DNA of 64,000 nucleotides from Neoechinorhynchus agilis (Eukaryota > Animalia > Acanthocephala), in the NCBI GenBank assembly GCA_051530055.1, contig CM121341.1:310001-374000 (forward strand), written 5' to 3'. Positions 1,778-51,062 of the stretch are shown piece after piece. The translations under genes were made by a program, and so were the position numbers. The notes under the pieces are model-generated. The model was not told the origin of the DNA and did no database searches. It worked only from the letters and a program-made list of their open reading frames with translations. Numbering within the stretch: the stretch's first letter is position 1; each line of letters begins with the position of its first letter.

Positions 1778-1824
<47 letters not shown>

Positions 1825-1918: not shown

Positions 1919-1962
<44 letters not shown>

Positions 1963-3410: not shown

Positions 3411-3429
3411 TAAGACGTCATTGGCTCGA

Positions 3430-4320: not shown

Positions 4321-4324
4321 TCAA

Positions 4325-5509: not shown

Positions 5510-5541
<32 letters not shown>

Positions 5542-5972
5542 TGTTGAATCATACGCCACAGTCAAAACGCAGGTGTGAAGGGGCATCTGCGTATGAGATC
5601 GTGGTGGATGAGCTAATCATCAATAATCTCCATCCAAGATACAGAAGTTTTCTTGAGATTTAGGGAGATTTTCTCGGCCGATCGCAAAGCTCCATTGACA
5701 GGGAAAAATACGTTTGCAATTATTTTCAAAAAATTACTCACGTTCATTGAGGCTCCAAGGTGCCATCACGGGTCCTCGGTACAAAGGTTAAAACAAACCA
5801 TCAGCTCCACAATCGCTCAATTCATCAGCGAACAAAACAGAGCGATGCGCGGAATGTACAAGCAGCAATAAGAAACAGACGGCGATTTGCAATGTACAAA
5901 AAACGGAAGAAATATAGTCCGTGAAATTATTTGGCGCACGTTTAAATTTTAATCTTCATTTTTTAATTGAAA
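5393..5972 (+). repeat. 580-bp segment duplicated in inverted orientation at 16709-17288
   Basis: Reads as the reverse complement of 16709-17288 with no differences spotted by eye. Confidence 0.92.
5510..5570 (+). rRNA. 28S: 28S fragment downstream of the R2 site, internally deleted
   Basis: TAGCCAAATGCCTCGTCATCTAATTAGTGACGTG (5510-5543), then CCACAGTCAA, which lies further downstream in the intact copy at 45178-45322. Confidence 0.85.
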
Positions 5973-10835: not shown

Positions 10836-10837
10836 TT

Positions 10838-10965
10838 GGAATTATTGTTTAGGTCTACACCCGGTAAATGATTATTTATTAAAGACGTTTCAAACTTCAT
10901 CGGTATCATCATCAAACGTCTTAATAAATAATCATTTACCGGGTGTAGACCTAATCAATAATTCC
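10838..10965. repeat. Near-perfect ~52-bp inverted repeat (hairpin, 23-nt loop)
   Basis: 10838-10890 GGAATTATTGTTTAGGTCTACACCCGGTAAATGATTATTTATTAAAGACGTTT is the reverse complement of 10914-10965 with one mismatch and one indel. Confidence 0.92.
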
Positions 10966-11182
10966 AATGACATTCCCCGATACCTCAAATATCGACATTA
11001 AGTTTTTTGAATAGTTTAGAAGAAAAATTGCAGAAGGTTGGATATGCGTAGGTGAGCGTTGGTAGGAAGGGCGATTTATAAGCACTTGGTCAATAAAACG
11101 TTTCACCACCTAAGGGAAAAGTTTTTCACGGTTTCCAAAAAAAGCAATTTCATGTCTTTGTTGCTACCGGTCATTAAATATT

Positions 11183-28230: not shown

Positions 28231-28980
28231 ACGTCGTGAGCCTAAAAGTTAGAACACGTGCTCGTGCAATATCTTCTGATTTTGAGGAAATAAAATACAG
28301 TAAAATAGAAATCGACTGCTTTGTTTTATTGCCGCTTTATTTTCGTCGTTGTTTATATCGAAAACATGTTAAATCCATAACGCGTTAATCATTGAGAAAG
28401 TTATAGTTACGCCCGGCGTTTACCCGTTGCAAAAAACCTTACAGGAAAACAGAAATCTACTGCAGTGTTTTATTTGTGCTTTAGTTTATTCGTTTCTTAT
28501 ATCGATAACATTACGTCGTGAGCTTAATAATTAAAACAAATACTCATGCAATGTCTTCGGATTTCGAGCAAATAACATACATGAAAACAAAAATTTACTG
28601 CAGTGTTTTATTGGTGCTTGGGTTTCCTCGTTTTTTGCATCGCAAAAAAGACGTCATCGGCTTGAAAATTAGAACACGTTCTCATGCAAAATCTTCTGAT
28701 TTTGACCAAATAACATAGTGGAAACCTGAAATAGACTTAGGTGCTTTATTGCTGCTTTATTTTTCGTTCTTTATATCGAAAATATGACGTTATCTACTTC
28801 AAAATTAGAACACGTGCTAGAGCAACATCTTCAGATTATGAGCAAATAACATACAGGAAGACAGAAATCTACTCCGGTGTTTTATTGCATCTCTATTTTT
28901 TCTTTCGTTTATATCGATCAAAAAAGTTAAAAATTTAAACACGTGCTCATGGAATATCTTCTGATTGTGAGCCATATAAA
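28230..28980. repeat. Degenerate ~135-140-bp tandem repeat (about 5 copies)
   Basis: AAAATTAGAACACGTGCT..ATCTTCTGATT recurs at ~28245, 28665, 28801 and 28932. Confidence 0.7.
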
Positions 28981-28982
28981 CC

Positions 28983-30190
28983 AAATAAAAACCGAGATTT
29001 GAAAACGCATTCGTTTACTCACCCTTTGATCTTCGCTTTAATTTTGACGCGCTTTGGAAAAACATTAACAATAAAATAAAAACTCGAGATTTGAAAACGC
29101 ATTCGTGTACTCACTCTTAGTTCTTCACTTTAATTTAGACGCGCTCTTAAGAAACATTACCAATCAAATAAAAACTCGAGATTTGAAAACACATTCGTCT
29201 ACTCACTCCTAGATCTTCGCTTAAATTTAGACGCGCTTTGGAAAAACATTAACAATAAAATAAAAAATCGAGATTTGAAAACGCATTCGTGTACTCATTC
29301 TTACTCCTTCACTTTAATTTAGACGCGCTCTTAAGAAACATTACCAATCAAATAAAAACTCGAGATTTGAAAACACATTCGTCTACTCACTCTTAGATCT
29401 TCGCTTAAATTTAGACGCGCTTTTGGAAAACATTACCAATCAAATAAAAACTCGAGATTTGAAAACGCATTCGAGTGCAGACTCTTAGAGCATTACTTTG
29501 ATTTAGATGCGCTTTTGGAAAACATTATCAATCAAATAAAAACTCGAGATTTGAAAACACATTCGTTTACTCACTCTTAGTGTTTCACTTTAATTTAGAC
29601 GCGCTTTTGGAAGGCATTACCAATTAAATAAAAACTCGAGATTTAAAAACGCCTTCGTGTACTCACGCCTAGTTCTTCGCTTTAATTTAGACGCGCTCTT
29701 GGAAAACATTACCAATCAAATAAGAACTCCAGATTTGAAAACGCATTCGAGTGCTAACTCTTATAGATTCAATTTAATTTATATGGGCTTTTCAAAAACA
29801 CTATCAATCAAATAAAAACTCGAGATTTGAAAACGCATTCGTTTACTCACTCTTAGTGCTTCACTTTAACCTAGACGCGCTTTTGGAAAATATTATCAAT
29901 CAAATAATAACTCGAGATTTGAAAACGCATTGGTGTACCCACTCTTAGTTCTTCGCTTTAATTTAGACGCGCTTATGAAAAATATTATCGATCAAATAAA
30001 AACTCGAGATTTGAAAACGCACTCGTTTACTCACTCTTAGTACTTCACTTTAATTTAGACGAGCTTTTGGAAAATATTATCAATCAAATAAAAACTCGAG
30101 ATTTGGAAACGCATTCGTGTACTCGCTCTTTGATCTTCACTTTAATTTAGAGGAGCTTTTGGAAAACATTATCAATCAAATAAAAACTTT
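28983..30190. repeat. 92-bp tandem array, about 13 copies
   Basis: Unit AAATAAAAACTCGAGATTTGAAAACGCATTCG...TTTAATTTAGACGCGCTTTTGGAAAACATTA recurs every ~92 bp. Confidence 0.95.
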
Positions 30191-30499
30191 TGGTCAATAG
30201 TCACAAAAGTTAAAGATAACTAAATTTGCAAGATTCATTAAAATTGGATAACACCATTAAAATCAGCGCGTCAGATATGCTCAAACTGATATATCATTTT
30301 GTTGCCAATTTTAAGAACCATGGAAATAATTCAGGTATCTTATATGAACTAGAATCATAAAACTTAGTGTCAAAATTTAACACGCAACAAGACGCCGTTA
30401 TTGCAGGTGTATTCAGCATCAAAAGTATATCTAGAAAAGTTAATTTGATCTTAAATTTATTGATGTTTTAATATCACTAATCAAGGTTATAAGTCTCAG

Positions 30500-31372
30500 A
30501 ATTGAACAGCGAATAACTCAAGAACCATATAAGACGATCCTAAGAAAACGTGCAAATTCGTTATTAAGCGTGTTGCATTGCGCAATACAATCGAAAGGGA
30601 ACCGGGTTAATATTCCCGAGCCAGGAAGCGGTTTATGCTTGATCTTTTCAGATGTTCTTCTTGGGCAGATGATGTTCAGCATAAGTGGTGACACTAGCAA
30701 TCCCAGAGAATAACTATACGAGGTCTAGGGAAGAGTTTTCTCTTCTTTGTTAGGAACTTTATCCCTGGAATTAGATCGTCTGTTGATATTGTACACGTTC
30801 CGTAATGCAGCGCGATTCCTGCGATGTATCGAGCGCTTTGTATTGTCCTTGAAAATCTGGTTACGAGAATATTCAGACCGTACCAGTTCGTACGTATTTC
30901 CGCAGCAGGTCTCCAAGGTGAGTAGCCTCTAGTCGACAGGGAAACGTAGGCAAGGGAAGTCGGCAAATTAGATCTGTAACTTCGGAAAAAGGATTGGCTC
31001 TACAAGCTGAGATGGCCGGGCTTTCGCGAGAAGCGGTATGTTGTCGACTATTGGATCTGTCCCAGTTATTTGCTCTTGCGAAAGAGTCGATTTCGAGGAC
31101 GGAACTTGGTGCTGCGTACTGTGGACAGCGATAGTTATGCTCCGCGTTTGTTCGGCGTATCCAAAAGGGCACGCTTGCTTCTTGCGCGGGGAACCGATCA
31201 GCGTTAAACAGCTGGCCTTGAACTGGTATGGACAAGGCTAATCCAACTGTTGAATTAAAACAAAGCATTGCGATAGCTGTAATCGTTGTTGACGCAATGT
31301 GATTTCTACCCAGTGCTCTGAATGTTAAAGTGACGAAATTAATTTAAGCGGGGGTAAACGGTGGACGTAACT
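30500..31372 (+). rRNA. 28S: 28S rRNA internal fragment ending ~20 nt before the R2 site
   Basis: GAAAGGGAACCGGGTTAATATTCCCG, CCGCAGCAGGTCTCCAAGGTGA, GGGAAGTCGGCAAATTAGATC, GTGATTTCTACCCAGTGCTCTGAATG, ends GGTAAACGGTGGACGTAAC. Confidence 0.93.
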
Positions 31373-35499: not shown

Positions 35500-35778
35500 C
35501 CTCTTTTGAAGTAGATAGCTATGTTCCGCGTTTGTTCGGCGTATCCAAACGGGCACGCTCGCCTCTCGCTCGGGGATCCGATCAACGTTAAACTGCTGGC
35601 CTAGAACTGGTATGGACAAGGGGAATTTAACTGTTGAATTAAAACAAAGCATTGCGATAGCTGTAATCGTTGTTGACGCAATGTGATTTCTACCCAGTGC
35701 TCTGAATGTTAAAGTGACGAAATTAATTTAAGCGGGGGTAAACGGTGGACGTAACCATGACTTTTCCAAGTAGCCAAA
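35500..35778 (+). rRNA. 28S: 28S fragment forming the 5' flank of R2 copy E
   Basis: AGAACTGGTATGGACAAGGGGAAT...GGTAAACGGTGGACGTAACCATGACTTTTCCAAGTAGCCAAA. Confidence 0.92.
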
Positions 35779-36009
35779 ATTTAGATGATAGGTCATCAGG
35801 TACACCCTCTTCCACCGGGGGCTTGGCGCTTCTTTTAGATTGTGTCAATCAACAACTAACGCGTTAGAGTTCCATCGTGTCCTTCAGGAATTTATAAAGT
35901 GCCCAGTTTGCAAGCCAGATGTGATATGTACCGGAAAAACTAAGGTGAAGCTGATTAACGATCACATTGTATCATCCCACAAGCAGGTTGTGGAATGGAT
36001 GTGTGGCAT

Positions 36010-38535
36010 ACATAAACACGTTTTATTTAAGAAAAGCACAATCCACACACTTGCCAGCATCTATCTTTGCTGAAGGCGCCTGGATGTCGGATGTTGGGGC
36101 AAGAGAGGTGGGACTTGTCTTTGAAGGAGTTTTAATGTGCGATCGGAAGTTTAGTACAGGAGATGATCGTTTCAGAGTCTTTCATTGTTCTCCGATTATT
36201 AAGGAAAGATTGGGCTTGGAGGAGAAAAGATTTTTGGTAGAGAGTGGTACGAGCGAGGGGGATGAAAAAGGTTTGGGTTACGGGTGTTTACGAGGAAAGA
36301 GTATTTAGAGATAAGGGAAGAAAATTGTGGAGGGCGTCGAAGAAGACGAAGGGCGTTTTTGGAGAAAATCGAGTGGAGGTGGGCGTCGAGGGGAGGGAGT
36401 GAAGTCCGGCAAATTCTCGCCGCTCTCCTGTGGTAGGTTTCGAGGGAATGGAGAGCATTGACGGAAAGGGCGAGGAAAGTTGGGAAACCGTATGTAAGGA
36501 TAGGAGGGATGGCAGAAAGATAAAAGTGGGCAAGGTGTTTAGGGGATACGCCACGACGGCCTTAGAGAGTGTAAATGAAATGTGCTCATCCCATTTAAGG
36601 TTCTCTTGTAAAATCAGGCCCAGTATTCGGAGAGAAGAGGAGCGTTGGATGGGGGAGTGAGAGGCGCGGGGATAAGATTGCGTTTGGAAATGTGGTGGAC
36701 AAGCTCAAAAGATTTGGATAAGTTTAAGGAGAGGTTTAGGGTGGAGAGCGAGGAAATGAGATGGTTGAGCTCGTCGATGGTTGTGGAGAGAAAGAGAGGG
36801 AGATGCGATGGTAATGACTGTGAGGTCATCGGTATAGAGAAAATATTTGGTAGGGGGAGATAGGGGATGAAGGTCATGTAGAAAAATGTCAAAGACGAGA
36901 GGGGAAAGTACGGCGCATTGGGGCACCCCTTCAAATATGGGTAGAGAAGAGGAGCAAGAAGTTCCACATTGAATATATTGTTTGCGGTTGGAGAGGAAAC
37001 AGGAATTCCAAGCGAGTTGCCAGGTTGGGAAGCACATGCTTGGAAGAGAAGGGAGTGATCTACCGACTCAAACGCCCTGGAAATATCTAGTTGCACGAGA
37101 CGGACTGTTGATGCTGGACTGGAATCTTAGCTGCGCACAAGCGTATCGTAGATGCAGAGGAGGGCATCAGAACAAGAGTAATTGGGACGGAAAGCGAATT
37201 GGGAAGGGGAGATGTTTTTGAGGAATAAATGAAGTAGGCGGGTTTTAAAACATTTTTCTAAGATTTTAGAGAAAGGTGAGAGGATAGAGATAGATCGAAA
37301 GGATGTGGGGGAAATCGGTTTATCGTTTTTGGTTGGTGGGACGACACGGGCTTCCTTAAGAGATGATTGGAAAGAGCCCAGTAGAAAGCTATGGTTCGTT
37401 ATGTGCGTTAGAGGATCTATAAGTTCCGGGATGATGAAACGAATGGCCCAATATGGGATAGTCGAATTACTGGAAAATTAGCGGGCAGGCGTTTAACGAT
37501 CTCTAGCATTTCGACAGGGCTTAACTAAGAAAGGGCATTTATGAATGGGCGGGTCAGAAATTGAGAAAGGAGGTTGGGATAATGCATTGGAGGTTTCGGT
37601 AGGACAGAGGCTTTTATTCATGGAGTTAGGGATTGAGAGGATATCGGATTTGGGGAGAGATGCGCGGACGGTGCATCTACCAAGACCAGTGACATTTTTT
37701 ATTTCACGCCACCAGTTTCGATTGGGAACGGTCGAGAGACGAGATGAGAGGAATAATTTGTGGGCTATACGGATGCGTTTTGTCTTTGTGGAGTGGAGGG
37801 GTAAGCAGGATTAAATGACCGGAAAGCTTTGGTGACCTGCATTTGAGGGTTTTTTTAGAAAAGGCGAGAACCATGGAGGGTCGCGGTTCGAGATTCGTAT
37901 TGTTTTGCGGGGAAAGGAGGCCTTAATCGCAGATTCTATTAGAATTAACAAAGAGCCCATTGCAATCGAGAGGTCGGTGCAAACGATCGTAGAGCGGTTT
38001 TGCGTTATAAGAAAATTGACACGTACAGCAAAGGATTGGATATGATGATCACGTTTATCCCAGACAACGCCGGGGTCGGAAAAGGAACCCTTTTCTGAAG
38101 TGATGAGGGGGAGAGAAGGATGGAACAATGGTCAGATGAGGCGATCGGGGGGAGTTTGGTAGTGCACGAGTATTGCCTGATGTTTGAGAGAATTTTATCA
38201 AGGCGGGGGGCGCTTTGGGCTCGGCATTGTTTGCAAGTGTTTATGACTTTAGGTCCTGCGACGACGTTGATACTAACAGATTTGATTGCAATTGTTTACG
38301 ACGTTAGATCTTGTTACGGCGTTGATCGTCTGACAAGGAAAGTATTCGATGATGTGTGACGACGACGAGAGAGAGAACGTTGACGAGAGAACGAACGTTG
38401 AACGTTGACGATTGGCGAGAGAGAGAGAACGTTGAACGTTGACGATTGAGAGAACGATGATGATTGACGAGAGAGAACGTTGTCGAGAGAGAGAACGTTG
38501 AACGAGAGAGAGAACATTGACGAGAGAGAGAACGA
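36010..38535 (-). mobile_element. CR1/L2-like LINE nested in R2 copy E
   Basis: QLDISRAFESVDH, GVPQCAVLSPLVF..YTDDL, PRKTIRISNRDPPWF; CGTTCTCTCTC-repeat 5'UTR at 38360-38535 resembling 31730-31820. Confidence 0.82.
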
Positions 38536-39145: not shown

Positions 39146-39296
39146 TGTGACAGGTACTGATGTGGTTGCCATGACGCAACCAATCAATGTTACACACACA
39201 TTGGATAACGGTGTGTTTGGTTGTGTTTGGGCGGGGGTGTGCTGTGTGCAATAAAAAGGTCGTAGATAGTTTGCAGGCATGTCACGAGACGTTACA
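39146..39296 (+). repeat. 5' LTR
   Basis: Differs from 41729-41878 by two substitutions and one indel. Confidence 0.95.
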
Positions 39297-41728
39297 TCTG
39301 GCGACGAGGGTGGGATACCCTTGTTTGTCCAACTCATGCAGCAACAAACGATATTGATGGAAAATATACAAAAGCGCTCCGACGAGTTCATGAAAATAAT
39401 TCGCACGAAATTCGACGGTCAGGCGGCGCTTAGCAGAGAAGCAGACGGAAAATCGAGATCTGGAATATCGATTGTTCCTTTCAGGAGTTTTGAGAAAGGA
39501 GAAGAAAGCTGGACCAATTACCACAAAGAACTAAAGGCCTATTTCTGCTCGGTTGCCGTTTCGGACGAAGAACAAAAAAAGTCACGTATGCTCTCATGGG
39601 TGGGCCCGAGTAGCTTTGATATTATCTCGAAAGCGACACCAACAAGTGTGGAAGAGTTGTCGTACGACGAGGTCGTGAACACATTGGACACTCACAATAG
39701 TGACAAAGTCCACGTGATAACAGCACGATTTCGATTCGTGAACACACGGAGCAGCCAATGGTTGCAATTTTCATGAAAAGGAAATCACCTATGATTCTCA
39801 GGCAATAAAGGAACGGATTCGAGACATGGTCGCAATGTATTCTCCGGACGCGTTTGTGCGTAGAACTGGTCTCTCGGATGGAAATATTGATCTGGACAAA
39901 CTTCTGAGTATAGCTTACAACTTTGAAGAAATGAACGTGGCTCCGACTTTACATATCGAAGCGCCCATCACGAATGTTTGAGAGGAAACGATGGAGAAGG
40001 CGAGCGATACCGTGTCCTGAAAACGAAAAAGCGATTCGTTGCCTTCTCGCCGGATTCCATTTTCACTTCAACCGGCAGTGAAAGCGCAGTTAGAAGAATT
40101 GTGTGATACCGGTGTGTTGGTGAAGGTGGACACAAACGATGATGGAATCGATTGGGCTACCCCGATGGTGATCGTAAGGAAGCCTGCCGGGAAACTGTGA
40201 ATTTGCGCAGATTTCAAGGTTACTATCAATCGATACTTGAGCCCAGAATCGTATCAGATGCCCAGTATCGAAGATATGCTGAATAATATTTCGAACGGTA
40301 AGATATTTTCTAAGCTAGACCTAACAAACGCTTACCTGCAAATCCCAGTAAGTCAATCCTATCAACACTTATTAACAATATCGACGCCGTGGGGATATTT
40401 CCGATACATCAGGTTACCATTCGGCATCTCCAACGCTCCAGCGATTTTTCAGAGTTACATCGATTCCACAATCAAGGACATTAACGGAATCCATGCATAC
40501 ATAGATGACCTGATAATCGTTTCGGATACCGAAGAAGACCATATAAAAAGCTTGAGGCGATTGTTGGAGAGATTTCGTGAAGTTGGACTTACAGTTTCTA
40601 AACAAAAATGCTCGTTTTATACAGATAAGATAGAGTACCTGGGCTTCGTTATAAAGGAAAATTCTATCCGACCATACGAAGAGCGGAAACGAGCCATAAG
40701 AGATGCTCCACGACCAACTACAAAACACAATCTTATATCATGGCACGGGTTGGCAACATACCACTCACGATTTACGCCGCATCTTCAGGACATCTGTAAG
40801 CCTTTACATTATCTAACACGGAAATAGAAGCGATTTGTGTGGACAGAAAAAGAGGAAGATGCGATCCGTAAAGCCAAAGAGATCCTATCAATACCGCAGA
40901 CGCTAGTTCCATATTCACAAGCCAAAGCCCTCGTTTCACCGAAGCAAATTGTTAGCGACAACGGTCCATAATTTATAGCTCCTGCCTTTCGGAAGTTCTG
41001 CATGGACGAATGCATAACACACATCAAGGCAAGTCCGTACCACCGGCAGACAAACGGTTTGGCAAAAAGATTCGTCCAAACATTAAAGGACCGAGTACTG
41101 AAAAGAGGACCGGACCATAGGAATACCAATCTCTGGCGATTCCTGGAAGTCAACCGCAATACACCGCATTCGACCACCGGTAAAAGTCCCTCAGAAGCTA
41201 TAATTCGTCGACGAATACCGACAATTTTCGATATTGGAGGCATGGTCTAAAAAAGTTGGCACGAAGATAGGTCGGACAAATCCAAGGCGCACCACGATCA
41301 AGCTTCCGCGAAGGAAACAAGTTTTGGCATAGGAGTTCCCGTATGGTGAAGGAATATGCAAACTGGAAAATATCAGGAGGCGACAATCGCAAAACGAAAT
41401 GGTCCACTATCCTATGAAGTGGACACCCATATGGGAACGCGTCGAACACATGCAAACAAGATAAGAAAGCGGGAAGAGGCAATCGTAAAGACCGAGCCGA
41501 GAAACCAAGTAGAAAGAACTGCTGAAGAGAAGCATTCGGGGCAAGAAGCAGGGCCAGACGAGAATGAAGAAAGCAAAGAAGCAATCGCCGTAAAAGTAGA
41601 ACAGTAAATTGATGATCAGGAAGTTGAAGCATCTCAAGAATCCAAAGCGCCGATTCTGCGCAGAAGTGTAGGGACGAGAAAACGCCCCACCCTACCGTAT
41701 GATGTCTATTTGCGGAGGGGGTAGAGAA

Positions 41729-41878
41729 TGTGACAGGTACTGATGTGGTTGCCATGACGCAACCAATCGATGTTACACACACATTGGATAACGGTGTGTT
41801 GGTTGTGTTTGGGCGGAGGTGTGCTGTGTGCAATAAAAAGGTCGTAGATAGTTTGCAGGCATGTCACGAGACGTTACA
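41729..41878 (+). repeat. 3' LTR
   Basis: Follows the PPT and is followed by the TSD. Confidence 0.95.
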
Positions 41879-42295
41879 TGTTCAATCGAGTCTACTGTTT
41901 TTACAGTGGTCGAGGCGTATGAAAGCGTTGAAGATGTTCTAAACAAGAGTAACCTCCATCCAAGATACAGAGGTTTTCTTGAGACGGAGCGAGATATCCT
42001 CCGTAAATCGTTAGGTCCCATTAATGGTGAATTTGTCGATGCGGCGGCTATGCGATATGCTCAGTACTTGCGATGTGGTCGGAGTAACGAAGTGCCTCGA
42101 GTCTCTAACGCGAGAGAAGTAGGGCTTAAGATCATTAAACTGAGGAAAGGCCCGACTCAGGCTCTCTCCGCTATTGCCTACCACGTACTGGGTAATCCTT
42201 CATTGTGGAAGAAGGTAGCTACGAAAGTAACAATGGAGGTTCAAAACAACAAGGAATAATATGCGCAAGTTGCACAGAACGTCTCTGACGCCAAT

Positions 42296-43891
42296 GTGCC
42301 TCTGGAAGTCCACCTTGGAGGTCTTCTAAAGAATAGTGTAGTATCTCCTTTGTTTGTTTTGTTCGCTGCTGCCGCAGCATACTCAAGTGATTTCTCGGTC
42401 CATTCGCCTTTCGAACGACAAGTGCGTCGAATCTTTTGTCCCGGAATTGGAACACACGCTTACAACGTGTGGATCGACGAATCCGGCATCTATCCATGTG
42501 TTAGATGTCGCGGTATTACGAGATACCAAGACCGTGAGCTTAAGAAGAGACGAAATCGTGCCCTGTATTTTGCCAACACCTCGAAGCTTGCAGCTGAGGT
42601 GTTTAAAAATGCAGAGAGGAGAGAATGTCATCTGAATCCGAAAGAAACAGTTGAACATTATCGTCGTTTATTTGAAGGAAACGTCCAACCTGCGAGTCTG
42701 CCAAAAAGTACTGTTGCAAATGAACAGCAGTCTCCAGAGGAACGTTGGCCGGTCATCACAACGGTGGAAGCCGAAGATGCCCTCAAAAGCATCAAGCCTT
42801 CAAGCGCATCGGGTCCGGATAAGATAACGGTTCGAGATGTTCGAGCCTTCGATCCGTTACTTCTGGGTATGACGTTGCTCTTTAACTTCGTCATGCAACA
42901 CGGAGGGCCGCCACAATTGTGGAATGAGTCCAAAACTATCTTGTTGCCCAAATCAAGCGCGTCACCGGAGAAGCTGCAAACTCAGGGCGGTTGGAGACCG
43001 ATTACGATCTCCTCCATTTTGATGCGTGTCTTGCACCGCATCATTCTAAAGCGGCTTCGAAGAGTATGCTTTCTGGACGCTGGACAAACGGCGTTTGACC
43101 CGTCGGCCTGTATGGCTAACCTACTCACTCTTCGGAGTGTTGTTAGAGAAAAGCGGGCAAACAGGAAACCTCTTGCAGTAGCTGTGCTCGACATAAAGAG
43201 TGCCTTCGACACTGTTTCACATGCTGCAATAGAGGAGTCACTTCGTAAAATAGGGTGTCCTCACTATCTGCAAAGATACGTGATGAGCTCTTACTGCGAC
43301 AGCAGTACGAAGATCCGTATGCCCAACGCCAGACCGTCAGACCCTATTAGCTTCCGGAGAGGAGTAAAGCAAGGGGATCCCCTCTCCCCCCTGCTATTCG
43401 CGCTGTGTGTAGACGAGGCACTGCAGGAAGTTCGAAGACTTGATTTAGGTGTTCAGCTTAAAGGGAACGTTCGTCTGTCGCATCTTGTATACGCAGATGA
43501 CGTTCTCCTGATGGCTGATAACTACGATAATCTACAAAAAATGATTGACACACTGCGGGGCAAGCTCAGAGAGAAGGACCTTATACTGAGTGCAGAAAAG
43601 TGTCAGACATATAGGCATGCCTATAGGTGCAACAAAATGATTATCGATAGAGAATCGTCGGTAGAGATCGAAGGGGTGTTGCTGACAGCAATTAAGGAAG
43701 GGGACCCGGTGAAATACCTAGGTGGTACTCCCTGGAAAGAGACCACTCTAGATGAAGGACTGGCGTTGTTAGGCACCCTATTTGAAGCGACAAAACGGGT
43801 ACAACTCTCACCGACTCAGGCCGCCCACCTGCTGAACGACTATGCAGTGCCATCCCTGGTGGCTAGACTCGAAGCCTCCTGGGACATATAG
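42296..43891 (+). pseudogene. R2 copy E reverse transcriptase; reading frame broken by stops at ~42257 and 43889
   Basis: SGPDKI, WRPITISSILMRVLHRI, LDIKSAFDTVSH, GVKQGDPLSPLLF, YADD, KYLG. Confidence 0.92.
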
Positions 43892-45177: not shown

Positions 45178-45209
<32 letters not shown>

Positions 45210-45322
45210 TGCATGAATGGATTATTGAGATTCCTACTGTCCCTGTCTGCAGCCTAGCGAAACCACAGTCAAGGGAACGGGCTTGGAGAGTAACAGCGGG
45301 GAAAGAAGACCCTGTTGAGCTT
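45178..45322 (+). rRNA. 28S: 28S segment, +1 to +145 downstream of the R2 site
   Basis: TAGCCAAATGCCTCGTCATCTAATTAGTGACGTGCATGAATGG...GGGGAAAGAAGACCCTGTTGAGCTT. Confidence 0.95.
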
Positions 45323-45405
45323 AGCCTTTTGCATCAACAGCTGCTATAACCACTACAACAACAATAATATACAATGTCGATCCAGATGGGGCCCTTAAGT
45401 GTTCT

Positions 45406-48390
45406 ATGTGCAAAATTGCGGCCATTGGAAAGACAAAATTTCGCTTATTTAACGAACATCTGGCAAAAGTTCACGGAATTACTGGTCTTGTATGGCGGTG
45501 CCCGATATGTACAAAGTATGAACACTGTGAACATCGTAGCATGTCCGTTCATCTGAGAAAGTGCCAATCGAATTATCCTGACAAGTACCGATTTCTACTC
45601 GATGATATATGCAAATCAAGTGTTCACATTAATGTTTTTGCTAGTCAATCGTCCGTGTTGTACATACCCGGCGATGACAAACCAATTGAATGTTTGCTTT
45701 GCGACTACTCTGTGATTGGAACTGGGAAGTTCAATTCGATGGAACATCACTTAACCTCGATTCACAGAGTGACGGACTGCCGATTTCGATGCGGATTGTG
45801 TCTCGCAAATTTTGGAACTCTACCTCAAGTACGTAGTCATTACAATCATTGCCGAACGAATATGGGGAATAGCAGCTCTAATGGTCCTATGGAGTCAAAA
45901 GAAAAGCTCGATGGCACTAGTACTGATATTCATCACTCAATGATTGACAAAGCGGATTACAGTAGCAAGTCAAATGGTGCATCCGATTTTCCTAGCGAGC
46001 CAAAAACAAATTATAACGACGCGAGCGATATCGAATCTGTTTATTCTACTCAAACACGAGATGAGAATTTATGTCTCAATAATCCGAATCGTAAAAGTCG
46101 GAACAGCGTTCTGCAAAATGAATACAGAACCGATGCAAGTGCTACAGCTACATTCGTTAATGGGCATATTGAATTACCTACCTCGTCGTTCCGGCCTACA
46201 AACGATCACACCGAACGAAATGAATTGCCTACCTCAACGCTCCGGTCTACGTACGACCATGTTGAACGGATGGTATTGTGTACCCCTTCGCAACGTCGTG
46301 CGGACGACCATGTTATAAATATCGAATTGTCTACCTCATCACACCAGCCTACGTATGATTACGTTGAGCAAACGGATAGGTCTACCTCATATAACCGGCC
46401 TTCAACTGCAGAATATTCTCAGAATGTAAACGATATCACAGATAAATTGGAAACGCATCATGGTATCAACCCTAATGATTTAAATGATAATGCCCAAAAC
46501 TGTTCTCAAATCGAAGTCGCCTACCCTCTTGAATCGGAAAAGCCCCTCGAATGTCCAATTTGTTCTTTGAATGTTGTTGGAAAGACAAGACACCGGATTT
46601 TTCTTAATCATTTGGAAAAAGTTCACAATAAGTTATCAGTCTCCTGGATATGCCAACTTTGTAAATCCTTTAGTAGTGAAGTTCCGGGGAGTGTCGGCTC
46701 TCATTATCGACGGTGCAAGGCTGTAAAGGTTAAAGAGTACAAGGAATTACTAGCGAGCAGTACAAAAGATGCTGTTCTTAAGAAAACAAATTCCACAGTT
46801 GAAATCGTGTATACCGGAAACGAATTTCCAGCACTTTGTTCGCTCTGCCAGATTTGCTATCTTGGTCAAGGACAGTGGAACGAGATCGAGCGGCACATTC
46901 GTTCTGATCATGGCAGCACGCGCGTTTTGTTTCTATGTGGCAATTGCAAAGTTGAATCCTCGGAAAACTCATTTAGCGCCCGATCGCATCTCACGCAATG
47001 CACGAAAAGGCTTCGGTTTTCAGAGAATACACAACATGCTAAAAAGGAAGATTCTCGTACACCTATTGACGAAAACTCATTTGCCTCGGATCACCTGCGA
47101 AACAACCTCAATATTAACTTCCCTATCACCGAACCAGACATCCCTACTTCTACAATAGCTGTGAACGAGGTTGAATATGGTACGTGCACTACCGCGAGTC
47201 AAATCAGTGTACCCCGCGAAGTACTATACGAAGCATGCAACAACGAACATCAGCCCTTATCTTCATTCGACGGTCTTGACAATATACAGGAAACCATCAC
47301 AAACTATCTTCCCTCGGAACCTCTGTGCGCAAGTCACGAGCCTCTTCAAGCTGTGGAAAAGGACAACGAGGAACTTCAGCATACACGCGCAATCTCAGAA
47401 GCTCCAGTTTCTACCCCACAGTTTTTTTTCGAAACCCCTGGGGACTGTCCTAGTAACAACAACCTTCACGCGCGACGGTCTATTGAACACTTTTCAACAA
47501 CAGAAGGACTGAGTGCAGGAGAATTCTCGACGCAAGAAGCCTTCGAATTCTTCAGCCAACCGCTTCAAAGACAAGATCTTCATCCTCGGTATCGGGAATT
47601 TCTAGAACAGGCGAGCTCAGCAATGCGTGAAATTGACGGACCTATTTCAAAAGACGTAATCGACGATATGTTAAATCGATACGTCACGTATCTTAAATGC
47701 GGACGGATTTCTAACAAAGAGGCTGCGCCGATGTCAATCGCACGATACCGTGGTCTCAAAATCATTAAGCTCAGAAAGTCCTCAACGATGACTATGGCTA
47801 CTGTCGCATTCCATGTTTTTAAAAATCCAACAATGTGGCGGAAAGTACAATCCACAATGGCCAACGAAATGAACTATCAGAGCATGCTATTTGAGCGAAT
47901 CGCAACAAACGTCGATGATGCAAACGCCAGTCTTTTTGACTTGATGAGCGCACTCAAACAAAATCGTGAGTTATCATCTGAGTTTATACTGTATAGTGCA
48001 GCTTCAGCGTTCAAATGCGACTTTGTTGTACACAAGCCAACATCTGACAAACCAAAACGAATACGCTCCCACCTGGTTACTAACAAATCTTATAATGTCT
48101 GGATAGACGAATCGGGCTGCTATCCATGCGAGAGGTCACGAGCGCTCAATGTTCAGCAATCCCGCCAATTAACTCGCCGACGATACCGCGCGATGTATTT
48201 CAATAATACGAGTCGACTTGCGAACTTAGTATTTAATGACAATACTGCCAATCAGATGAATACTTTCGCAAAACTTTTCAAGGCAACTCGGAACTTGCTG
48301 CTACCCCAAATGACTATAGAGAATCAAGTAACGTGCCCAAATCGGAACTATGGCCAGCGGCTACGGTCGAAGAAATCAGAGCAGCAATAA
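45406..48390 (+). CDS. R2 copy F N-terminal region: 2 x (CCHH-CCHC-CCHH-CCHC) fingers, S/T-rich linkers, OTU-like domain, pre-RT region
   Basis: Finger cassettes at ~45400-45852 and ~46552-47001; the frame is open from 45325 with no upstream ATG. Confidence 0.85.
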   Translation: MCKIAAIGKTKFRLFNEHLAKVHGITGLVWRCPICTKYEHCEHRSMSVHLRKCQSNYPDKYRFLLDDICKSSVHINVFASQSSVLYIPGDDKPIECLLCDYSVIGTGKFNSMEHHLTSIHRVTDCRFRCGLCLANFGTLPQVRSHYNHCRTNMGNSSSNGPMESKEKLDGTSTDIHHSMIDKADYSSKSNGASDFPSEPKTNYNDASDIESVYSTQTRDENLCLNNPNRKSRNSVLQNEYRTDASATATFVNGHIELPTSSFRPTNDHTERNELPTSTLRSTYDHVERMVLCTPSQRRADDHVINIELSTSSHQPTYDYVEQTDRSTSYNRPSTAEYSQNVNDITDKLETHHGINPNDLNDNAQNCSQIEVAYPLESEKPLECPICSLNVVGKTRHRIFLNHLEKVHNKLSVSWICQLCKSFSSEVPGSVGSHYRRCKAVKVKEYKELLASSTKDAVLKKTNSTVEIVYTGNEFPALCSLCQICYLGQGQWNEIERHIRSDHGSTRVLFLCGNCKVESSENSFSARSHLTQCTKRLRFSENTQHAKKEDSRTPIDENSFASDHLRNNLNINFPITEPDIPTSTIAVNEVEYGTCTTASQISVPREVLYEACNNEHQPLSSFDGLDNIQETITNYLPSEPLCASHEPLQAVEKDNEELQHTRAISEAPVSTPQFFFETPGDCPSNNNLHARRSIEHFSTTEGLSAGEFSTQEAFEFFSQPLQRQDLHPRYREFLEQASSAMREIDGPISKDVIDDMLNRYVTYLKCGRISNKEAAPMSIARYRGLKIIKLRKSSTMTMATVAFHVFKNPTMWRKVQSTMANEMNYQSMLFERIATNVDDANASLFDLMSALKQNRELSSEFILYSAASAFKCDFVVHKPTSDKPKRIRSHLVTNKSYNVWIDESGCYPCERSRALNVQQSRQLTRRRYRAMYFNNTSRLANLVFNDNTANQMNTFAKLFKATRNLLLPQMTIENQVTCPNRNYGQRLRSKKSEQQ

Positions 48391-48887
48391 AGGGTATAAA
48401 GTCGAACAGCGCATTGGGTCCAGATAAAGTATCTATTCGAGAAATTCTCGCGTTCGACAGAGATCTTATTGGATTGACGACCTTGATAAATTCAATCATC
48501 AGTGTTGGAATACCACCAACTGAGTTGCTCGAGTATAAGACAATTCTTCTGCCCAAAAATGGTAAAGATAGCACAGCCCTAAAATCAGTCGTAAATTGGA
48601 GGCCAATAACAATCTCCTCAGTTATTTTGAGGATCTAACACCGTCTTATTTTAGCAAGGCTTCGAAAGGAAATGAAACTACATAGCAGTCAAACAGCGTT
48701 CGAAAGCGCCGCCTGCAATTCTAATCTCCTCCTACTAAGGACGCTCATTAAGCAAAAGCGACAAGATAAGAAACCCCTCGCACTGGCCGTCCTGGACATC
48801 AAATCAGCATTTGACACGGTTAGTCACAAAACCATAAGCTAAGCGCTAATCGAACATGGTTGTCCACAATACTTACGGCAGTATCTG

Positions 48888-50543
48888 ATGGACGTGTTCT
48901 CGTCTTCACATACCCGGCTCCATCTTCCCAACTCAAGACCATCAGAACCTATCCACTTTCGTCGAGGAGTGAAACAAGGTGACCCACTGTCGCCGTTCAT
49001 CTTTGCTTTGTGCATCGATAAAGCGCTACAAAAAGTCAGCGATTTAGGCCTCGGGACCTCAATAAGAACCTGCCGTTTAAGTCAGCTGGTGTACGCGGAC
49101 GACATCCTACTAACGTCTGACAGTACCGACGACCTTCAAATTATGCTAGATTGTATCAACACGGAGCTGAACGATATTGGCCTATCGCTCTCCGCCGGAA
49201 AATGCCGAACGTACAATCACACATTCAAAAACAGCAAATTAGAAATCAATACTCGGCCAAAAGTACAGATAAAAGAACAACTAATTGAGATAATAGTCGA
49301 CGGTGACCCTGTTACGTACTTAGGCGGAACACCTTGGAAAGAGACAGACATGCAGCTTGTTACAAATGAATTGGATAAGCTCTTCAAGTGCACTAAAGAT
49401 GCAGGATTGAGCCCGACACAAGCTGCACACCTCATAAACGATTACGGGCTTCCGCGCCTTGTTTCGCGAATTCAAGCCGCTCATGATATATCGATTACAA
49501 CGCTCGACGCGATAGAACAGCAGTGGAGAACAAAACTAAAGAAACTTCTATATCTTCCCCTTTCGTTAAACGACGGAGTAATTTTCCTTCCCCTGAGTAA
49601 AGGCGGACTTGGATTCAATTCAATAAAACAATCCGTCATGGCATCGAGAATGAAGAGCTTCCGTGAGGCCAAATTGAGAATCCCCGAACTGGAGCTATTG
49701 GACAAAAATTTTGGAAAAGTTATAAAATACTGCACGGAAATCGGGGCTGCAAACCTAAGCGAAAGGAAGTGCGACATCCACAAAGCGCATGAGATTGACA
49801 ATATCTTAAAATGGCGAAAAGCGGTGACCCAATCACAAGGGATCGAGTGCTTCACCGCTGGCACAATTGATCGAAGTCTCATTTCATTTCGGTACAGAAA
49901 AGATCACCATAAAAATTACACCGAAAAAGTCAAAATGCGACTTCAACTACTAGAGGTTGGAGCGACTTTAGCGAAGTATGACCAAGAAAGAACAAAACGG
50001 TGTCGCCACTGTTCAGCTCCGGTCGAATCACAACTTCATGTCTTAAATGACTGCCCACACAATACGGGCATGATGACAGAACGCCATGATGCCGTTCAAA
50101 AACGTTTCATCTGGGCTCTACAGAAACGAGGAGGCTCTCGGTGGGAACTGCACACCGATAACCGTATCCACGATCCAGGTGGTCAGCTGTACAAACCCGA
50201 CCTTATCATAATAGATAAGCAGAAAAACGAAGCCCTCATTACAGACTTTGCTGTCTATTATGAAACCGATAGGGATCGCCCAGAAGCAGTGATGCAACAC
50301 AAGGAAATAAAGTACGCAACAATCAAAGGAAAGGTAGCTGAGCAACACGCAATCCCGATATATAACGTCAAAACAATAGGCATTGCGGTTGGATCAAGAG
50401 GTTCATACTCTAACGAGCTGCTCAAACGATTGCGAACTTTCGGACTATCATACAAAACAGCGATCAACATGGCAAGAACAGCGCACGACAAGTCGATCAA
50501 ATTGTTTCATACATTCATGGGTCGTCGATGGACGCTGCGATAG
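48888..50543 (+). CDS. R2 copy F RT C-half, zinc knuckle and endonuclease
   Basis: GVKQGDPLSPFIF, YADDILL, YLGG, CRHCSAPVESQLHVLNDC, ERHD, YKPDLII. Confidence 0.92.
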   Translation: MDVFSSSHTRLHLPNSRPSEPIHFRRGVKQGDPLSPFIFALCIDKALQKVSDLGLGTSIRTCRLSQLVYADDILLTSDSTDDLQIMLDCINTELNDIGLSLSAGKCRTYNHTFKNSKLEINTRPKVQIKEQLIEIIVDGDPVTYLGGTPWKETDMQLVTNELDKLFKCTKDAGLSPTQAAHLINDYGLPRLVSRIQAAHDISITTLDAIEQQWRTKLKKLLYLPLSLNDGVIFLPLSKGGLGFNSIKQSVMASRMKSFREAKLRIPELELLDKNFGKVIKYCTEIGAANLSERKCDIHKAHEIDNILKWRKAVTQSQGIECFTAGTIDRSLISFRYRKDHHKNYTEKVKMRLQLLEVGATLAKYDQERTKRCRHCSAPVESQLHVLNDCPHNTGMMTERHDAVQKRFIWALQKRGGSRWELHTDNRIHDPGGQLYKPDLIIIDKQKNEALITDFAVYYETDRDRPEAVMQHKEIKYATIKGKVAEQHAIPIYNVKTIGIAVGSRGSYSNELLKRLRTFGLSYKTAINMARTAHDKSIKLFHTFMGRRWTLR

Positions 50544-50632
50544 CTGAATTCCAAAGACCAATAGAAAAGATTAACATTGCAAACATACAGAAAAACGATT
50601 GAAAACGAATACGAACGGAAGATATTATCTAA

Positions 50633-51062
50633 ACTATTGTAAAACTAAGTTTAAGACAAAGATTCCCAGGACACAAAGAAACTATTGAAACTAAAGAAAG
50701 CTTATCAGTTTACCCCCATCCGCCGGGTACGAAGCGCTTCTTCGCTTTAGATGGCGATCTTCCAAACAATCAACCAACTGTTTCAACTGCTGATTCGACT
50801 TATTTTTTCACCCAAAAGACAGAAAAGTCGAGTGTTAACCCCACATCGACCGGAAGCGAAGCGCATTTTTCAGATGACGCTTTTCCCGATGATATGGAAG
50901 CCGAACCGCGTTTGAGTGTGACAATAGCAATAACATCATCACATTTTTCAACTTCTGATCGCCCAAACTTGTCCGATGAACTAACTTCGCCGGTGCAAAG
51001 CGGTCAAAGTGGATTTATACAGAAACTTACTAGCAAACCGCAAGAAGGACGTCTTACTTGAG
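50633..51062 (+). mobile_element. Probable 5' region of another R2-family copy (H), head-to-tail behind copy F
   Basis: VYPHPPGTKRFFALD matches the 5' motif in copies B, D and E; open S/T-rich frame to ~51062. Confidence 0.5.

What the first reader, a model, noticed from the sequence alone, without database searches (positions are those of the whole stretch)
45400..47001. Eight zinc fingers in two tandem CCHH-CCHC-CCHH-CCHC cassettes; cassette number varies between subfamilies
Seen: copy F has fingers CSMC..H....H, CPIC..H...C, CLLC..HH...H and CGLC..H..C (45400-45852), then a homologous second set CPIC/CQLC/CSLC/CGNC (46552-47001). Copies B, E and A show at most one cassette. Established: described R2 lineages have one to three N-terminal fingers that help set target specificity. 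Inference: cassette duplication may compensate for the missing Myb domain or change target recognition, which is relevant to engineering R2-based gene insertion.
Basis: partly seen in the sequence, partly recalled or inferred. Interest (0 to 1): 0.75.

Follow-up and report, generated by a model that had tools for sequence, protein, structure and literature searches.

The report
Eight-finger R2-like copy is a chimera
The eight zinc fingers are really there, but they arose when the front end of one ribosomal-DNA jumping gene was recently fused in frame onto a second, related one, giving a now-dead hybrid copy; the normal state in this spiny-headed-worm family is four fingers.

Summary
Observation confirmed. 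Eight fingers lie exactly at 45400-45852 and 46552-47001, as four CCHH-8aa-CCHC modules in one 1,022-codon open frame.

The tandem-duplication reading is not supported. The window is degenerate rDNA of an acanthocephalan, close to Neoechinorhynchus agilis. Window 45323-46401 (cassette 1 plus linker) is 98% identical in DNA to the start of a separate element, X, in N. agilis. X has one cassette and runs straight into its own body as an uninterrupted 1,346-codon ORF. That body is only 38-48% identical to copy F.

The F breakpoint (46401/46402) cuts a 17-residue linker repeat unit that is complete in X. So F is the derived form: X front end fused to a 5'-truncated element Y. F is dead, with one frameshift and two stops in the RT.

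All ten relatives with a complete cassette region (N. agilis, Pomphorhynchus laevis, three unnamed contigs) have exactly four fingers and no detectable Myb. The extra cassette therefore does not compensate for a missing Myb.

The family itself is the more interesting result. It inserts at the R2 site and its RT is closest to lineage-A R2. It carries two R2 ZnF3:2-like di-fingers and a catalytically dead OTU-fold domain where R2 has ZnF1-Myb. I found no description of this layout.

The parts
45178..45321 (+). 28S rRNA gene fragment running from the canonical R2 insertion site (TAGCCAAATGCC...) to 143 bp downstream (...GACCCTGTTGAGCTT). It lies between the 3' end of upstream copy E and the 5' end of copy F.
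   Evidence: Sequence read. Exact motif hits. Rfam LSU positions 2280-2388. In L001 the intact 28S reads straight through this point.
45322..46401 (+). X-derived segment of copy F. It holds a short leader, cassette 1 (fingers 1-4) and the Ser/Thr-rich linker with 17-residue repeats (ELPTSSFRPTNDHTERN and similar). It is 5'-truncated relative to X.
   Evidence: 97.97% nucleotide identity over 1,085 aligned columns to L002 21036-19952. There are 16 substitutions (3 synonymous, 13 non-synonymous) and one 6-nt indel. In L002 the X sequence and its open frame continue upstream of this point.
45400..45852 (+). Cassette 1: CCHH 45400-45474, CCHC 45499-45564, CCHH 45691-45765, CCHC 45790-45852.
   Evidence: Closest one-cassette relatives are X (95.5% aa) and P0020 (39%).
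46381..46422 (+). Chimera breakpoint at 46401/46402, DNA ...AACCGGCCT|TCAACTGCAG.... The last 17-residue linker unit is cut after DRSTSYNRP. X continues with IYDHADRV, F with STAEYSQNV.
46402..46551 (+). Remnant of the N-terminal leader of element Y (...NDNAQNCSQIEVAYPLESEKPLEC). It corresponds to P0001 residues about 30-81, so Y lacks roughly its first 90 nt.
   Evidence: Alignment with P0001. Leader comparison made by eye.
46552..47001 (+). Cassette 2: CCHH 46552-46626, CCHC 46651-46716, CCHH 46837-46911, CCHC 46936-47001.
   Evidence: 43% identity to the single cassette of P0001. AlphaFold2 model has pLDDT 90.9 and pTM 0.79.
47515..48270 (+). Conserved pre-RT region. It comprises a three-helix bundle (about 47530-47695), an OTU-fold domain with no conserved catalytic Cys or His (about 47725-48135), and then the RT N-terminal extension motif RRRYRAMYF (48175-48201).
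   Evidence: Alignment A3. AlphaFold2 pLDDT 79. Foldseek hits OTUD5 3tmp (E = 3e-6) and OTUD3 4bou (E = 4e-6, TM-score on target length 0.80). Motif coordinates.
48240..48260 (+). Frameshift. The reading frame changes here between the N-terminal 1,022-codon frame and the RT frame.
48255..50543 (+). Body of Y. It has an RT (WRPIT 48597-48611, RGVKQGDPLS 48963-48992, YADD 49092-49103) with in-frame stops at 48636-48638 and 48840-48842. Downstream are the CCHC motif CRHCSAPVESQLHVLNDC (50001-50054), the restriction-like endonuclease motif KPDL (50193-50204) and the stop codon at 50541-50543.
   Evidence: PDB sequence hits to R2 proteins 9nl3, 9dou and 9nl2 at E = 1e-48 to 2e-39.
50544..50715 (+). 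Remaining 3' UTR of F. The true 3' end and the expected downstream 28S flank are missing. From about 51090 the sequence is a repeat shared with window about 5745 (+) and about 16940 (-).
   Evidence: No downstream 28S sequence anywhere in the window. Shared repeat.

Best explanation
Copy F is a recent, now inactive chimera of two subfamilies of an acanthocephalan R2-like retrotransposon.

SHOWN:
- Its first 1.08 kb (45322-46401: cassette 1 plus repeat linker) comes from subfamily X. X exists in N. agilis as a normal one-cassette element.
- From 46402 onwards it is a second element, Y, truncated by about 90 nt at its 5' end. Y brings its own four-finger cassette, OTU-like region, RT and endonuclease.
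- The join is in frame, so the eight fingers read as one ORF.
- They are two heterologous DNA-binding heads stacked on one body, not a cassette that duplicated and then diverged.

INFERRED, how the join arose:
- The reverse transcriptase, copying Y RNA, may have switched near Y's 5' end onto an X transcript inside the low-complexity linker. It then ran on until the cDNA was joined to the top strand of 28S 143 bp downstream of the R2 nick.
- Alternatively, a DNA deletion fused two tandem neighbours (X - 143-bp 28S piece - Y).

INFERRED, the functional unit of the family:
- It is one four-finger cassette, that is two copies of a CCHH+CCHC di-finger related to the co-folded ZnF3:ZnF2 pair of lineage-A R2 proteins.
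- This cassette presumably anchors the protein on 28S DNA, and perhaps on template RNA, at the R2 site in place of ZnF1-Myb.
- Both cassettes of F come from lineages of this family, which uses the R2 site wherever junctions can be read. A doubled head is therefore not expected to change the target.
For: - Organism and setting: intact 18S, 5.8S and 5' 28S at 1-3631, with 28S fragments elsewhere in the window. The rDNA is 96-98% identical to N. agilis loci.
- X identity: window 45323-46401 is 97.97% identical to L002 21036-19952. After that point L002 continues with a body only 38-48% identical to F and with no second cassette.
- X is a coherent element: one 1,346-codon ORF, cassette - linker - OTU-like region - RT - endonuclease. 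Its body is 65% identical to P0001.
- Direction of the event: the 17-residue linker unit DRSTSYNRPIYDHADRV is whole in X and cut after ...NRP in F.
- Recency and lack of visible selection: 16 substitutions in 1,077 nt, 3 synonymous and 13 non-synonymous. F has a frameshift near 48250 and stops at 48636 and 48840.
- One cassette is the norm: all ten relatives in which the whole cassette region is present have exactly four fingers with the same spacing, and the shorter or broken relatives have fewer, never more.
- Uniqueness so far: no second F-type or Y-type copy in five N. agilis loci, about 107 kb.
- The 5' junction looks like a retrotransposition junction: an independent RT-truncated copy in L002 joins 28S at the same +142/+143 position.
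- Di-finger kinship with R2 ZnF3:2: the module profile hits the N-terminal finger pair of solved R2 proteins (9nl2 E = 2e-5, 9dou 2e-4, 9nl3 3.8e-4) and of a tick R2 protein. The best Foldseek PDB hit of the cassette model is R2Tg 9dou (probability 0.97, E = 0.079).
Against: - Only one X copy and one F copy were available, and the whole genome could not be searched. An F-type family with several copies cannot be excluded.
- The 1,022-codon frame is open across the junction and all 32 zinc ligands are kept, which would also fit a functional chimera. However, an in-frame join has a 1 in 3 chance, and 1.5% divergence predicts only about 1-2 disabling hits in that stretch.
- The upstream end of X in L002 is cut by the locus limit, so X's own 5' junction is unseen.
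- The template-switch and DNA-deletion routes are not distinguished.
- Assembly error in a repeat-rich rDNA region was not testable.
- The link to R2 ZnF3:2 is weak. CTCF finger pairs score as well, and the Foldseek E-value is 0.079 with TM-score 0.34.
Confidence: 0.75

Rival explanations
1. F represents a real, transposition-competent subfamily. Its N-terminus gained a second cassette by module accretion, and that architecture is, or recently was, maintained by selection.
For: - The frame is uninterrupted from 45325 to 48390 across the junction, with all ligands intact.
- The 5' end is joined to 28S at +143, a position used by another independent insertion. So the X-derived end was part of a retrotransposed cDNA.
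- Cassettes appear to be exchangeable in this family. X and P0001 are 65% identical in the body but only 34% in the cassette.
Against: - Only a single copy is known.
- The X-derived part differs from stand-alone X by changes that look neutral, 3 synonymous to 13 non-synonymous.
- The RT carries a frameshift and two stops.
- The join cuts a linker repeat.
- No relative has more than four fingers, and all ten with a complete cassette region have exactly four.
Confidence: 0.12
2. This is the first reader's model: an in-place tandem duplication of the cassette within one subfamily, followed by long divergence under selection, which compensates for loss of Myb or retargets the element.
For: The two cassettes are homologous, collinear and only 29-31% identical. 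Taken alone, that looks like an old duplication.
Against: - Cassette 1 with its linker is 98% identical in DNA to the N-terminus of a separate one-cassette element, so the join is recent while the cassette divergence is old.
- Cassette 1 is no closer to cassette 2 (31%) than to cassettes of other subfamilies (34-43%).
- One-cassette relatives also lack Myb and, where flanks can be read, use the R2 site.
Confidence: 0.03
3. The join at 46401/46402 is an assembly or chimeric-read artefact in a highly repetitive rDNA region.
For: The region is a mosaic of related elements, segmental duplications and rearrangements.
Against: - X and Y share no similar sequence at the breakpoint that could mislead an assembler.
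- The join is in frame.
- The X-derived part has its own private substitutions and a 6-nt indel relative to the L002 copy.
Confidence: 0.07

Closest known systems
R2 non-LTR retrotransposons, especially lineage A (R2Tg from zebra finch, PlaMe R2 from a turtle; PDB 9dou, 9nl2, 9nl3)
   Same: - Single ORF with RT, C-terminal CCHC motif and restriction-like endonuclease.
- Neighbouring copies have their 3' junction at the canonical 28S R2 site...|TAGCCAAATGCC, and full-length copies have their 5' junction at or within about 9 bp of it.
- The ORF is open through the 5' junction without an obligatory ATG.
- The RT is closest to lineage-A R2 among solved structures (E = 7e-55 against 1e-32 for silkworm R2).
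- The N-terminus has a CCHH+CCHC finger pair like ZnF3:ZnF2.
   Different: - No ZnF1 and no detectable Myb domain. Myb is used as the hallmark of R2 in PMC13188248.
- Instead there are two ZnF3:2-like di-fingers (four fingers) and an OTU-fold domain.
- Copy F stacks two such cassettes (eight fingers), against a published maximum of four.
- Many copies carry 34-143 bp duplications of 28S at the 5' junction.
R9 of bdelloid rotifers (Gladyshev and Arkhipova 2009, as cited in PMC5035012, PMC6895275 and PMC13486585)
   Same: - It is an R2-derived element in the rDNA of Syndermata, the group that contains acanthocephalans.
[quoted passage not shown] The family here leaves 28S pieces of 34, 95 and 143 bp between tandem copies.
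   Different: - R9 is reported at another 28S site, whereas these elements have their 3' junction at the R2 site.
- No R9 sequence was available to compare.
- The exhaustive cassette-profile search returned no protein named as coming from a rotifer.
Utopia / NeSL-clade elements
   Same: - RLE-bearing elements with 1-3 N-terminal fingers and no Myb.
- Some sponge Utopia proteins are predicted to have a co-folded finger pair like R2 ZnF3:2 (PMC13188248).
- NeSL and Utopia-1_TSP carry an N-terminal cysteine-protease domain (PMC4640811).
   Different: - Their targets are U2 snRNA or spliced-leader genes, not the 28S R2 site.
- Their protease is Ulp1-like, not OTU-fold.
OTU-family deubiquitinases (OTUD3, OTUD5)
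   Same: The predicted fold of window 47725-48135 matches them: Foldseek E = 3e-6 to 4e-6, TM-score on target length up to 0.80, rmsd 2.5 A over 137 aligned columns.
   Different: - No conserved Cys at the start of the catalytic helix and no conserved His (alignment A3).
- Pfam OTU is seen in only one member, at E = 0.15.
- It is probably a non-catalytic scaffold or binding domain.
Di19 / KCMF1-type double zinc finger (Pfam PF05605)
   Same: Nine of eleven cassettes give sub-threshold matches to this two-finger domain, best E = 3.7e-6. KCMF1 also appears in the PDB profile search.
   Different: The matches are below Pfam's gathering score. The second finger here is CCHC.

Membership tests
R2 retrotransposons | Single ORF with reverse transcriptase, then a CCHC motif and a restriction-like endonuclease | tested here: met
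   Pfam RVT_1. CRHC..H....C at 50001-50054 and KPDL at 50193-50204. PDB sequence hits to R2 proteins at E = 1e-48 to 7e-55.
R2 retrotransposons | Insertion at the conserved R2 site of the 28S gene | tested here: inconclusive
   Met for the neighbouring copies: 3' junctions ...|TAGCCAAATGCC at 5511, 17170 (-) and 45179 and three in L001, and 5' junctions at the site for P0001 and copy E. For F itself the upstream flank is 28S from the R2 site to +143, and the 3' junction is lost.
R2 retrotransposons | N-terminal ZnF1 followed by a Myb domain | tested here: not met
   - No Pfam hit at E <= 0.1 in the 994-aa N-terminal ORF.
- No Myb family among the matches of the pre-RT region at E <= 10.
- No PDB sequence match to the R2 N-terminus from the single sequence.
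- The region before the RT folds as a three-helix bundle plus an OTU domain. The bundle was not tested separately for a Myb-like fold.
R2 retrotransposons | HDV-like self-cleaving ribozyme at the 5' end | tested here: inconclusive
   An Rfam scan at E <= 10 of the 5' junction of the full-length relative (L001 9850-10450) found only 28S. R2 ribozymes are often missed by these models. F lacks the corresponding 5' region altogether.
R2 lineage-A co-folded ZnF3:ZnF2 pair | A CCHH finger followed closely by a CCHC finger | tested here: met
   Four times in F and twice in each relative with a complete cassette, with a constant 8-residue spacer.
R2 lineage-A co-folded ZnF3:ZnF2 pair | Sequence and structural correspondence to the solved ZnF3:2 pair | tested here: inconclusive
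   - Module profile against PDB: 9nl2 residues 9-65 at E = 2e-5, 9dou residues 225-283 at E = 2e-4, 9nl3 at E = 3.8e-4. CTCF finger pairs score similarly.
- Cassette model (pLDDT 90.9, pTM 0.79): the best Foldseek hit is R2Tg 9dou, probability 0.97, but E = 0.079 and TM-score 0.34.
R9 (rotifer) | Very long target-site duplication (126 bp) | tested here: inconclusive
   28S pieces that begin at the R2 site and end at +34, +95 or +143 separate tandem copies. In L001 one copy has its 5' junction at +95 and its 3' junction at 0, which is a 95-bp duplication. For F the 3' side is missing.
R9 (rotifer) | Sequence relatedness of the RT and N-terminus to R9 | not tested
   No R9 sequence was available, and the R9 paper is not held in the library.
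Utopia / NeSL clade | Placement of the RT within the NeSL/Utopia clade, and a U2 snRNA or spliced-leader target | not testable with these tools
   No reference sequences for these clades could be retrieved. The target here is 28S, not U2.
OTU cysteine proteases | OTU fold | tested here: met
   Foldseek hits 3tmp (E = 3e-6), 4bou (E = 4e-6, TM-score on target length 0.80), plus many viral and cellular OTU domains.
OTU cysteine proteases | Catalytic Cys and His | tested here: not met
   The invariant columns of alignment A3 (H23, Y56, Y59, L60, L81, V101, P105) include no Cys and no His within the OTU-fold part; H23 lies in the three-helix bundle. The residues before the first OTU helix are KSST, KSSR, PSAD, SSAY and KGSD in five of the six sequences.

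The most novel reading that the evidence does not exclude
The N-terminal finger cassettes of this family are exchangeable modules that are shuffled between subfamilies through the repetitive linker, by template switching of the reverse transcriptase. On this reading F is a captured example, or a member of a still-unsampled active lineage, in which shuffling produced a working R2-site enzyme with two stacked DNA-binding heads. Behind it stands a whole R2-site-specific family that finds the R2 target without ZnF1-Myb, using two ZnF3:2-like di-fingers and a dead OTU domain.
Probability: 0.12. Interest if true: 0.7.

Novelty: new variant of a known kind. Interest (0 to 1): 0.45.

Why it matters
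Taken at face value, an eight-finger R2 protein would double the largest N-terminal finger array reported for R2 and would suggest a route to retargeting R2-based gene-insertion tools. The evidence says this copy is a one-off, dead hybrid. It should not be used as a natural example of evolved cassette duplication.

What does matter is the family behind it. These elements sit at the canonical R2 site and have a lineage-A-like RT. Yet they lack the ZnF1-Myb pair that current work treats as the hallmark and main target reader of R2. In its place they carry two ZnF3:2-like finger pairs and an inactive OTU-fold domain.

If confirmed biochemically, this would show that the R2 target can be recognised by a different N-terminal solution. 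It would also show that N-terminal heads can be swapped between lineages. Both points are directly relevant to engineering target recognition.

The long 28S duplications (up to 143 bp) also bear on the open question of how and where second-strand nicking occurs.

Tried and rejected
- The word-indexed protein search with F's N-terminus found only one relative, and with the RT/endonuclease only distant R2-like proteins at 23-28% identity. The exhaustive profile search was needed to find the family.
- Rfam found no HDV-like ribozyme at a full-length 5' junction and no rRNA after F.
- A search for the 28S sequence expected downstream of F found nothing.
- Tandem Repeats Finder did not detect the linker repeats at DNA level. 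They are visible only at protein level.
- The idea that Y inserted into an X copy was checked. No remainder of X lies downstream of F in the window, but F's 3' flank is rearranged, so this is not excluded.
- Four further N. agilis loci and two unnamed short contigs were fetched to look for more F-type copies or 28S flanks. None was found.
- A new 28S target site for F was rejected, because an independent truncated copy uses the same +143 junction and a copy with a +95 5' junction has its 3' junction at the R2 site.
- An active protease role for the OTU-like domain was rejected, because no Cys or His is conserved in it.
- The R9 paper could not be read.
Full report
SETTING. The window is a decayed rDNA region. 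An intact 18S, 5.8S and 5' 28S lie on the minus strand at 1-3631, and 28S fragments lie at 30499-31362 and 45178-45286. Between them are many copies of a non-LTR retrotransposon with an RT and a C-terminal CCHC/restriction-like endonuclease. The only database relative of F's N-terminus in the first search was a hypothetical protein of the acanthocephalan Neoechinorhynchus agilis. Loci fetched from that genome share 96-98% identical rDNA with the window. The source is therefore N. agilis or a very close relative.

THE OBSERVATION. They form four modules, each a 25-residue CCHH finger, an 8-residue spacer and a 21-22-residue CCHC finger. Two modules make a cassette.
- Cassette 1 is 45400-45852 and cassette 2 is 46552-47001.
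- The cassettes are homologous (31% identity, E = 1.5e-19), and all 32 ligands are present.
- The frame is open from 45325, three bases after the junction with 28S, to 48390. The first Cys lies before the first ATG.
- The other copies in the window have one degenerate cassette at most.

WHAT THE ELEMENT IS.
- The upstream copy E ends at the canonical R2 site (...|TAGCCAAATGCC at 45178), as do two other copies in the window and three in locus L001.
- Full-length copies have their 5' junction at or within about 9 bp of that site.
- Among solved structures, the RT of E and F matches lineage-A R2 proteins best (E = 7e-55 and 1e-48). The silkworm R2 is next (1e-32), then LINE-1.
- The N-terminal 1,000 residues match nothing in Pfam or, as a single sequence, in the PDB.

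THE FAMILY. An exhaustive profile search with the cassette found 37 proteins.
- The named hits that are retrotransposon relatives come from N. agilis and Pomphorhynchus laevis. The one other named hit is a tick R2 protein, matched on its ZnF3:ZnF2-type pair.
- Two unnamed contigs carry full-length proteins of 1,339 and 1,492 aa.
- All ten relatives in which the whole cassette region is present have exactly four fingers with the same spacing.
- Downstream come a conserved region of about 230 residues, the RT N-terminal extension (RNRALYF), the RT, the CCHC motif and the endonuclease.

ORIGIN OF THE EIGHT FINGERS. Locus L002 (N. agilis scaffold JBMGUZ010000004.1) carries on its minus strand a sequence 97.97% identical to window 45323-46401, which is cassette 1 plus the linker.
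- There it is the start of one uninterrupted 1,346-codon ORF, element X. X runs from that linker directly into its own pre-RT region, RT and endonuclease, with no second cassette.
- X's body is 65% identical to P0001 but only 38-48% identical to F's body.
- Identity between F and X stops at 46401/46402 (...AACCGGCCT|).
- The linker consists of 17-residue units (ELPTSSFRPTNDHTERN, ELPTSSFRSTYDHVEQM, ELSTSSHQPAYDYVEQT, DRSTSYNRPIYDHADRV). The last unit is complete in X and is cut after DRSTSYNRP in F, where STAEYSQNV... follows. X therefore has the original arrangement and F the derived one.
- What follows in F resembles the N-terminal leader of P0001 from about residue 30. The second partner, Y, is thus an almost complete element lacking roughly its first 90 nt.
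- The F and X versions of the shared 1.08 kb differ by 16 substitutions (3 synonymous, 13 non-synonymous) and one 6-nt indel. That is recent and looks neutral.
- F's RT carries one frameshift near 48250 and in-frame stops at 48636 and 48840.
- No other F-type or Y-type sequence occurs in about 107 kb of N. agilis loci.

CONCLUSION ON THE CLAIM. The eight-finger ORF is a recent in-frame fusion of two divergent subfamilies' N-termini in a copy that is now dead. The 29-31% identity between the cassettes reflects the old split between subfamilies, not divergence after a duplication. Cassette 1 is no closer to cassette 2 than to other subfamilies' cassettes. One-cassette relatives also lack Myb, and where flanks can be read they use the R2 site. 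The extra cassette is therefore not a compensation for Myb.

HOW THE FUSION AROSE (INFERENCE).
- F's 5' end is joined to 28S 143 bp downstream of the R2 site. An independent copy in L002, truncated within its RT, is joined at the same position. So the X-derived end was probably the end of a retrotransposed cDNA.
- That favours a template switch from Y RNA to X RNA within the low-complexity linker.
- A later deletion between tandem neighbours (X - 28S piece - Y) remains possible, because such tandem arrays exist.
- X and P0001 are 65% identical in the body but only 34% in the cassette. This hints that the linker is a recurrent exchange point.

WHAT THE CASSETTE IS LIKE.
- An AlphaFold2 model of cassette 2, built with 11 cassettes, is confident (pLDDT 90.9, pTM 0.79).
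- Its best PDB match is the zebra-finch R2 protein (9dou, probability 0.97), but the match is weak (E = 0.079, TM-score 0.34).
- A profile of 18 single di-finger modules hits the N-terminal finger pair of solved R2 proteins (9nl2 residues 9-65, E = 2e-5; 9dou residues 225-283, E = 2e-4; 9nl3, E = 3.8e-4). It hits CTCF finger pairs about equally.
- The cassette profile also hits the ZnF3:ZnF2-type pair of a tick R2 protein.
- Pfam gives sub-threshold matches to the Di19 double finger in 9 of 11 cassettes.
- Recent literature describes a co-folded CCHH+CCHC ZnF3:2 pair as the signature of lineage-A R2, and similar pairs in Myb-less Utopia proteins (PMC13188248, PMC13580325). The modules here are best read as two copies of that kind of pair. 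This is supported but not proven.

WHAT REPLACES MYB.
- The conserved pre-RT region (47515-48270 in F) is predicted as a three-helix bundle followed by an OTU-fold domain (pLDDT 79).
- Foldseek matches OTUD5 at E = 3e-6 and OTUD3 at E = 4e-6, TM-score on target length 0.80, rmsd 2.5 A.
- No Cys or His is conserved at the catalytic positions. Pfam OTU appears once, at E = 0.15.
- I found no report of an OTU-like domain in RLE-bearing non-LTR elements. NeSL and one Utopia element carry a Ulp1-like protease instead.
- Whether the three-helix bundle is Myb-like could not be tested separately.

COMPARISON WITH THE LITERATURE.
- R2 proteins are described with 1-3 fingers plus Myb, up to 4 fingers in one ctenophore (PMC5035012, PMC13188248).
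- Acanthocephala and Rotifera do not occur in the main text of the 2026 survey.
- R9 of rotifers is an R2 derivative with a 126-bp target duplication at another 28S site (PMC5035012, PMC6895275, PMC13486585). The family here leaves 28S pieces of 34, 95 and 143 bp between tandem copies. The resemblance is suggestive, but R9 could not be compared.

VERDICT. The interpretation as an evolved cassette duplication is not supported. The underlying family is an undescribed variant of R2-like elements and is the more interesting object.

Noticed in passing
window 47515-48270 (copy F); also 41876-42600 (copy E), and P0001, P0026, P0028, P0030: The conserved region between the finger cassette and the RT is predicted to be a three-helix bundle plus an OTU-fold domain with no conserved catalytic Cys or His. 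It occupies the place of ZnF1-Myb in R2 proteins. I found no description of this in RLE-bearing retrotransposons.
   Followed up: partly
window 45178-45321; 5510-5544; 17171-17137 (-); L001 13745-13837; L002 16340-16475: Tandem elements are separated by 28S pieces that all begin at the R2 site and end 34, 95 or 143 bp downstream. The +143 end occurs in two independent insertions. In L001 a copy has its 5' junction at +95 and its 3' junction at the R2 site. This looks like long, variable target-site duplication, reminiscent of the 126 bp of rotifer R9.
   Followed up: partly
L002 21070-17033 (-) compared with P0001: Element X and P0001 are 65% identical from the end of the linker through the RT, but only 34% identical in the finger cassette. 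This suggests that cassettes are exchanged between subfamilies, or evolve much faster than the body.
   Followed up: partly
window about 4200-5510: A short copy has a degenerate cassette (4344...) and a pre-RT region (4965-5369), then directly a 3' end at an R2-site junction (5510/5511), with no RT. It may be an internally deleted, possibly non-autonomous, derivative.
   Followed up: no
window 5400-5900 (+) and 17300-16800 (-): The two stretches are nearly identical in inverted orientation. Each holds an element 3' end, 34 bp of 28S and the start of a 5'-truncated element. This is a segmental inverted duplication inside the decayed rDNA.
   Followed up: no
window about 36000-38500: A block of about 2.5 kb with very strong G-over-C skew (+0.45) interrupts the first di-finger module of copy E, between 35900 and 38550. 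Its nature is unknown.
   Followed up: no
window 39238-39297 and 41820-41879: The same 20-residue CCHH-like motif (CAVCNKKVVDSLQACHETLH) is encoded twice inside copy E. This suggests an internal duplication flanking inserted material.
   Followed up: no
window 28975-30187: A stretch of about 1.2 kb matches L002 1-2800 (N. agilis) in many registers offset by roughly 90 bp, at 82-86% identity. These look like tandem subrepeats, possibly of the rDNA intergenic spacer.
   Followed up: no
window 10836-10967: This stretch matches plant microRNA precursor models on both strands, well below their thresholds (68.7 bits against a gathering score of 150). It is probably a hairpin or inverted repeat of a small transposon, not a microRNA.
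   Followed up: no
window 35740-35830; L001 10000-10100: Full-length copies share a conserved 5' leader that reads through from 28S in frame (MTFPKAI...ISPPPGTRASS in two N. agilis proteins, P0001 and P0023). Copy E keeps the corresponding DNA in a more diverged form, and F lacks it. It may hold the 5' processing ribozyme, but Rfam did not detect one.
   Followed up: partly
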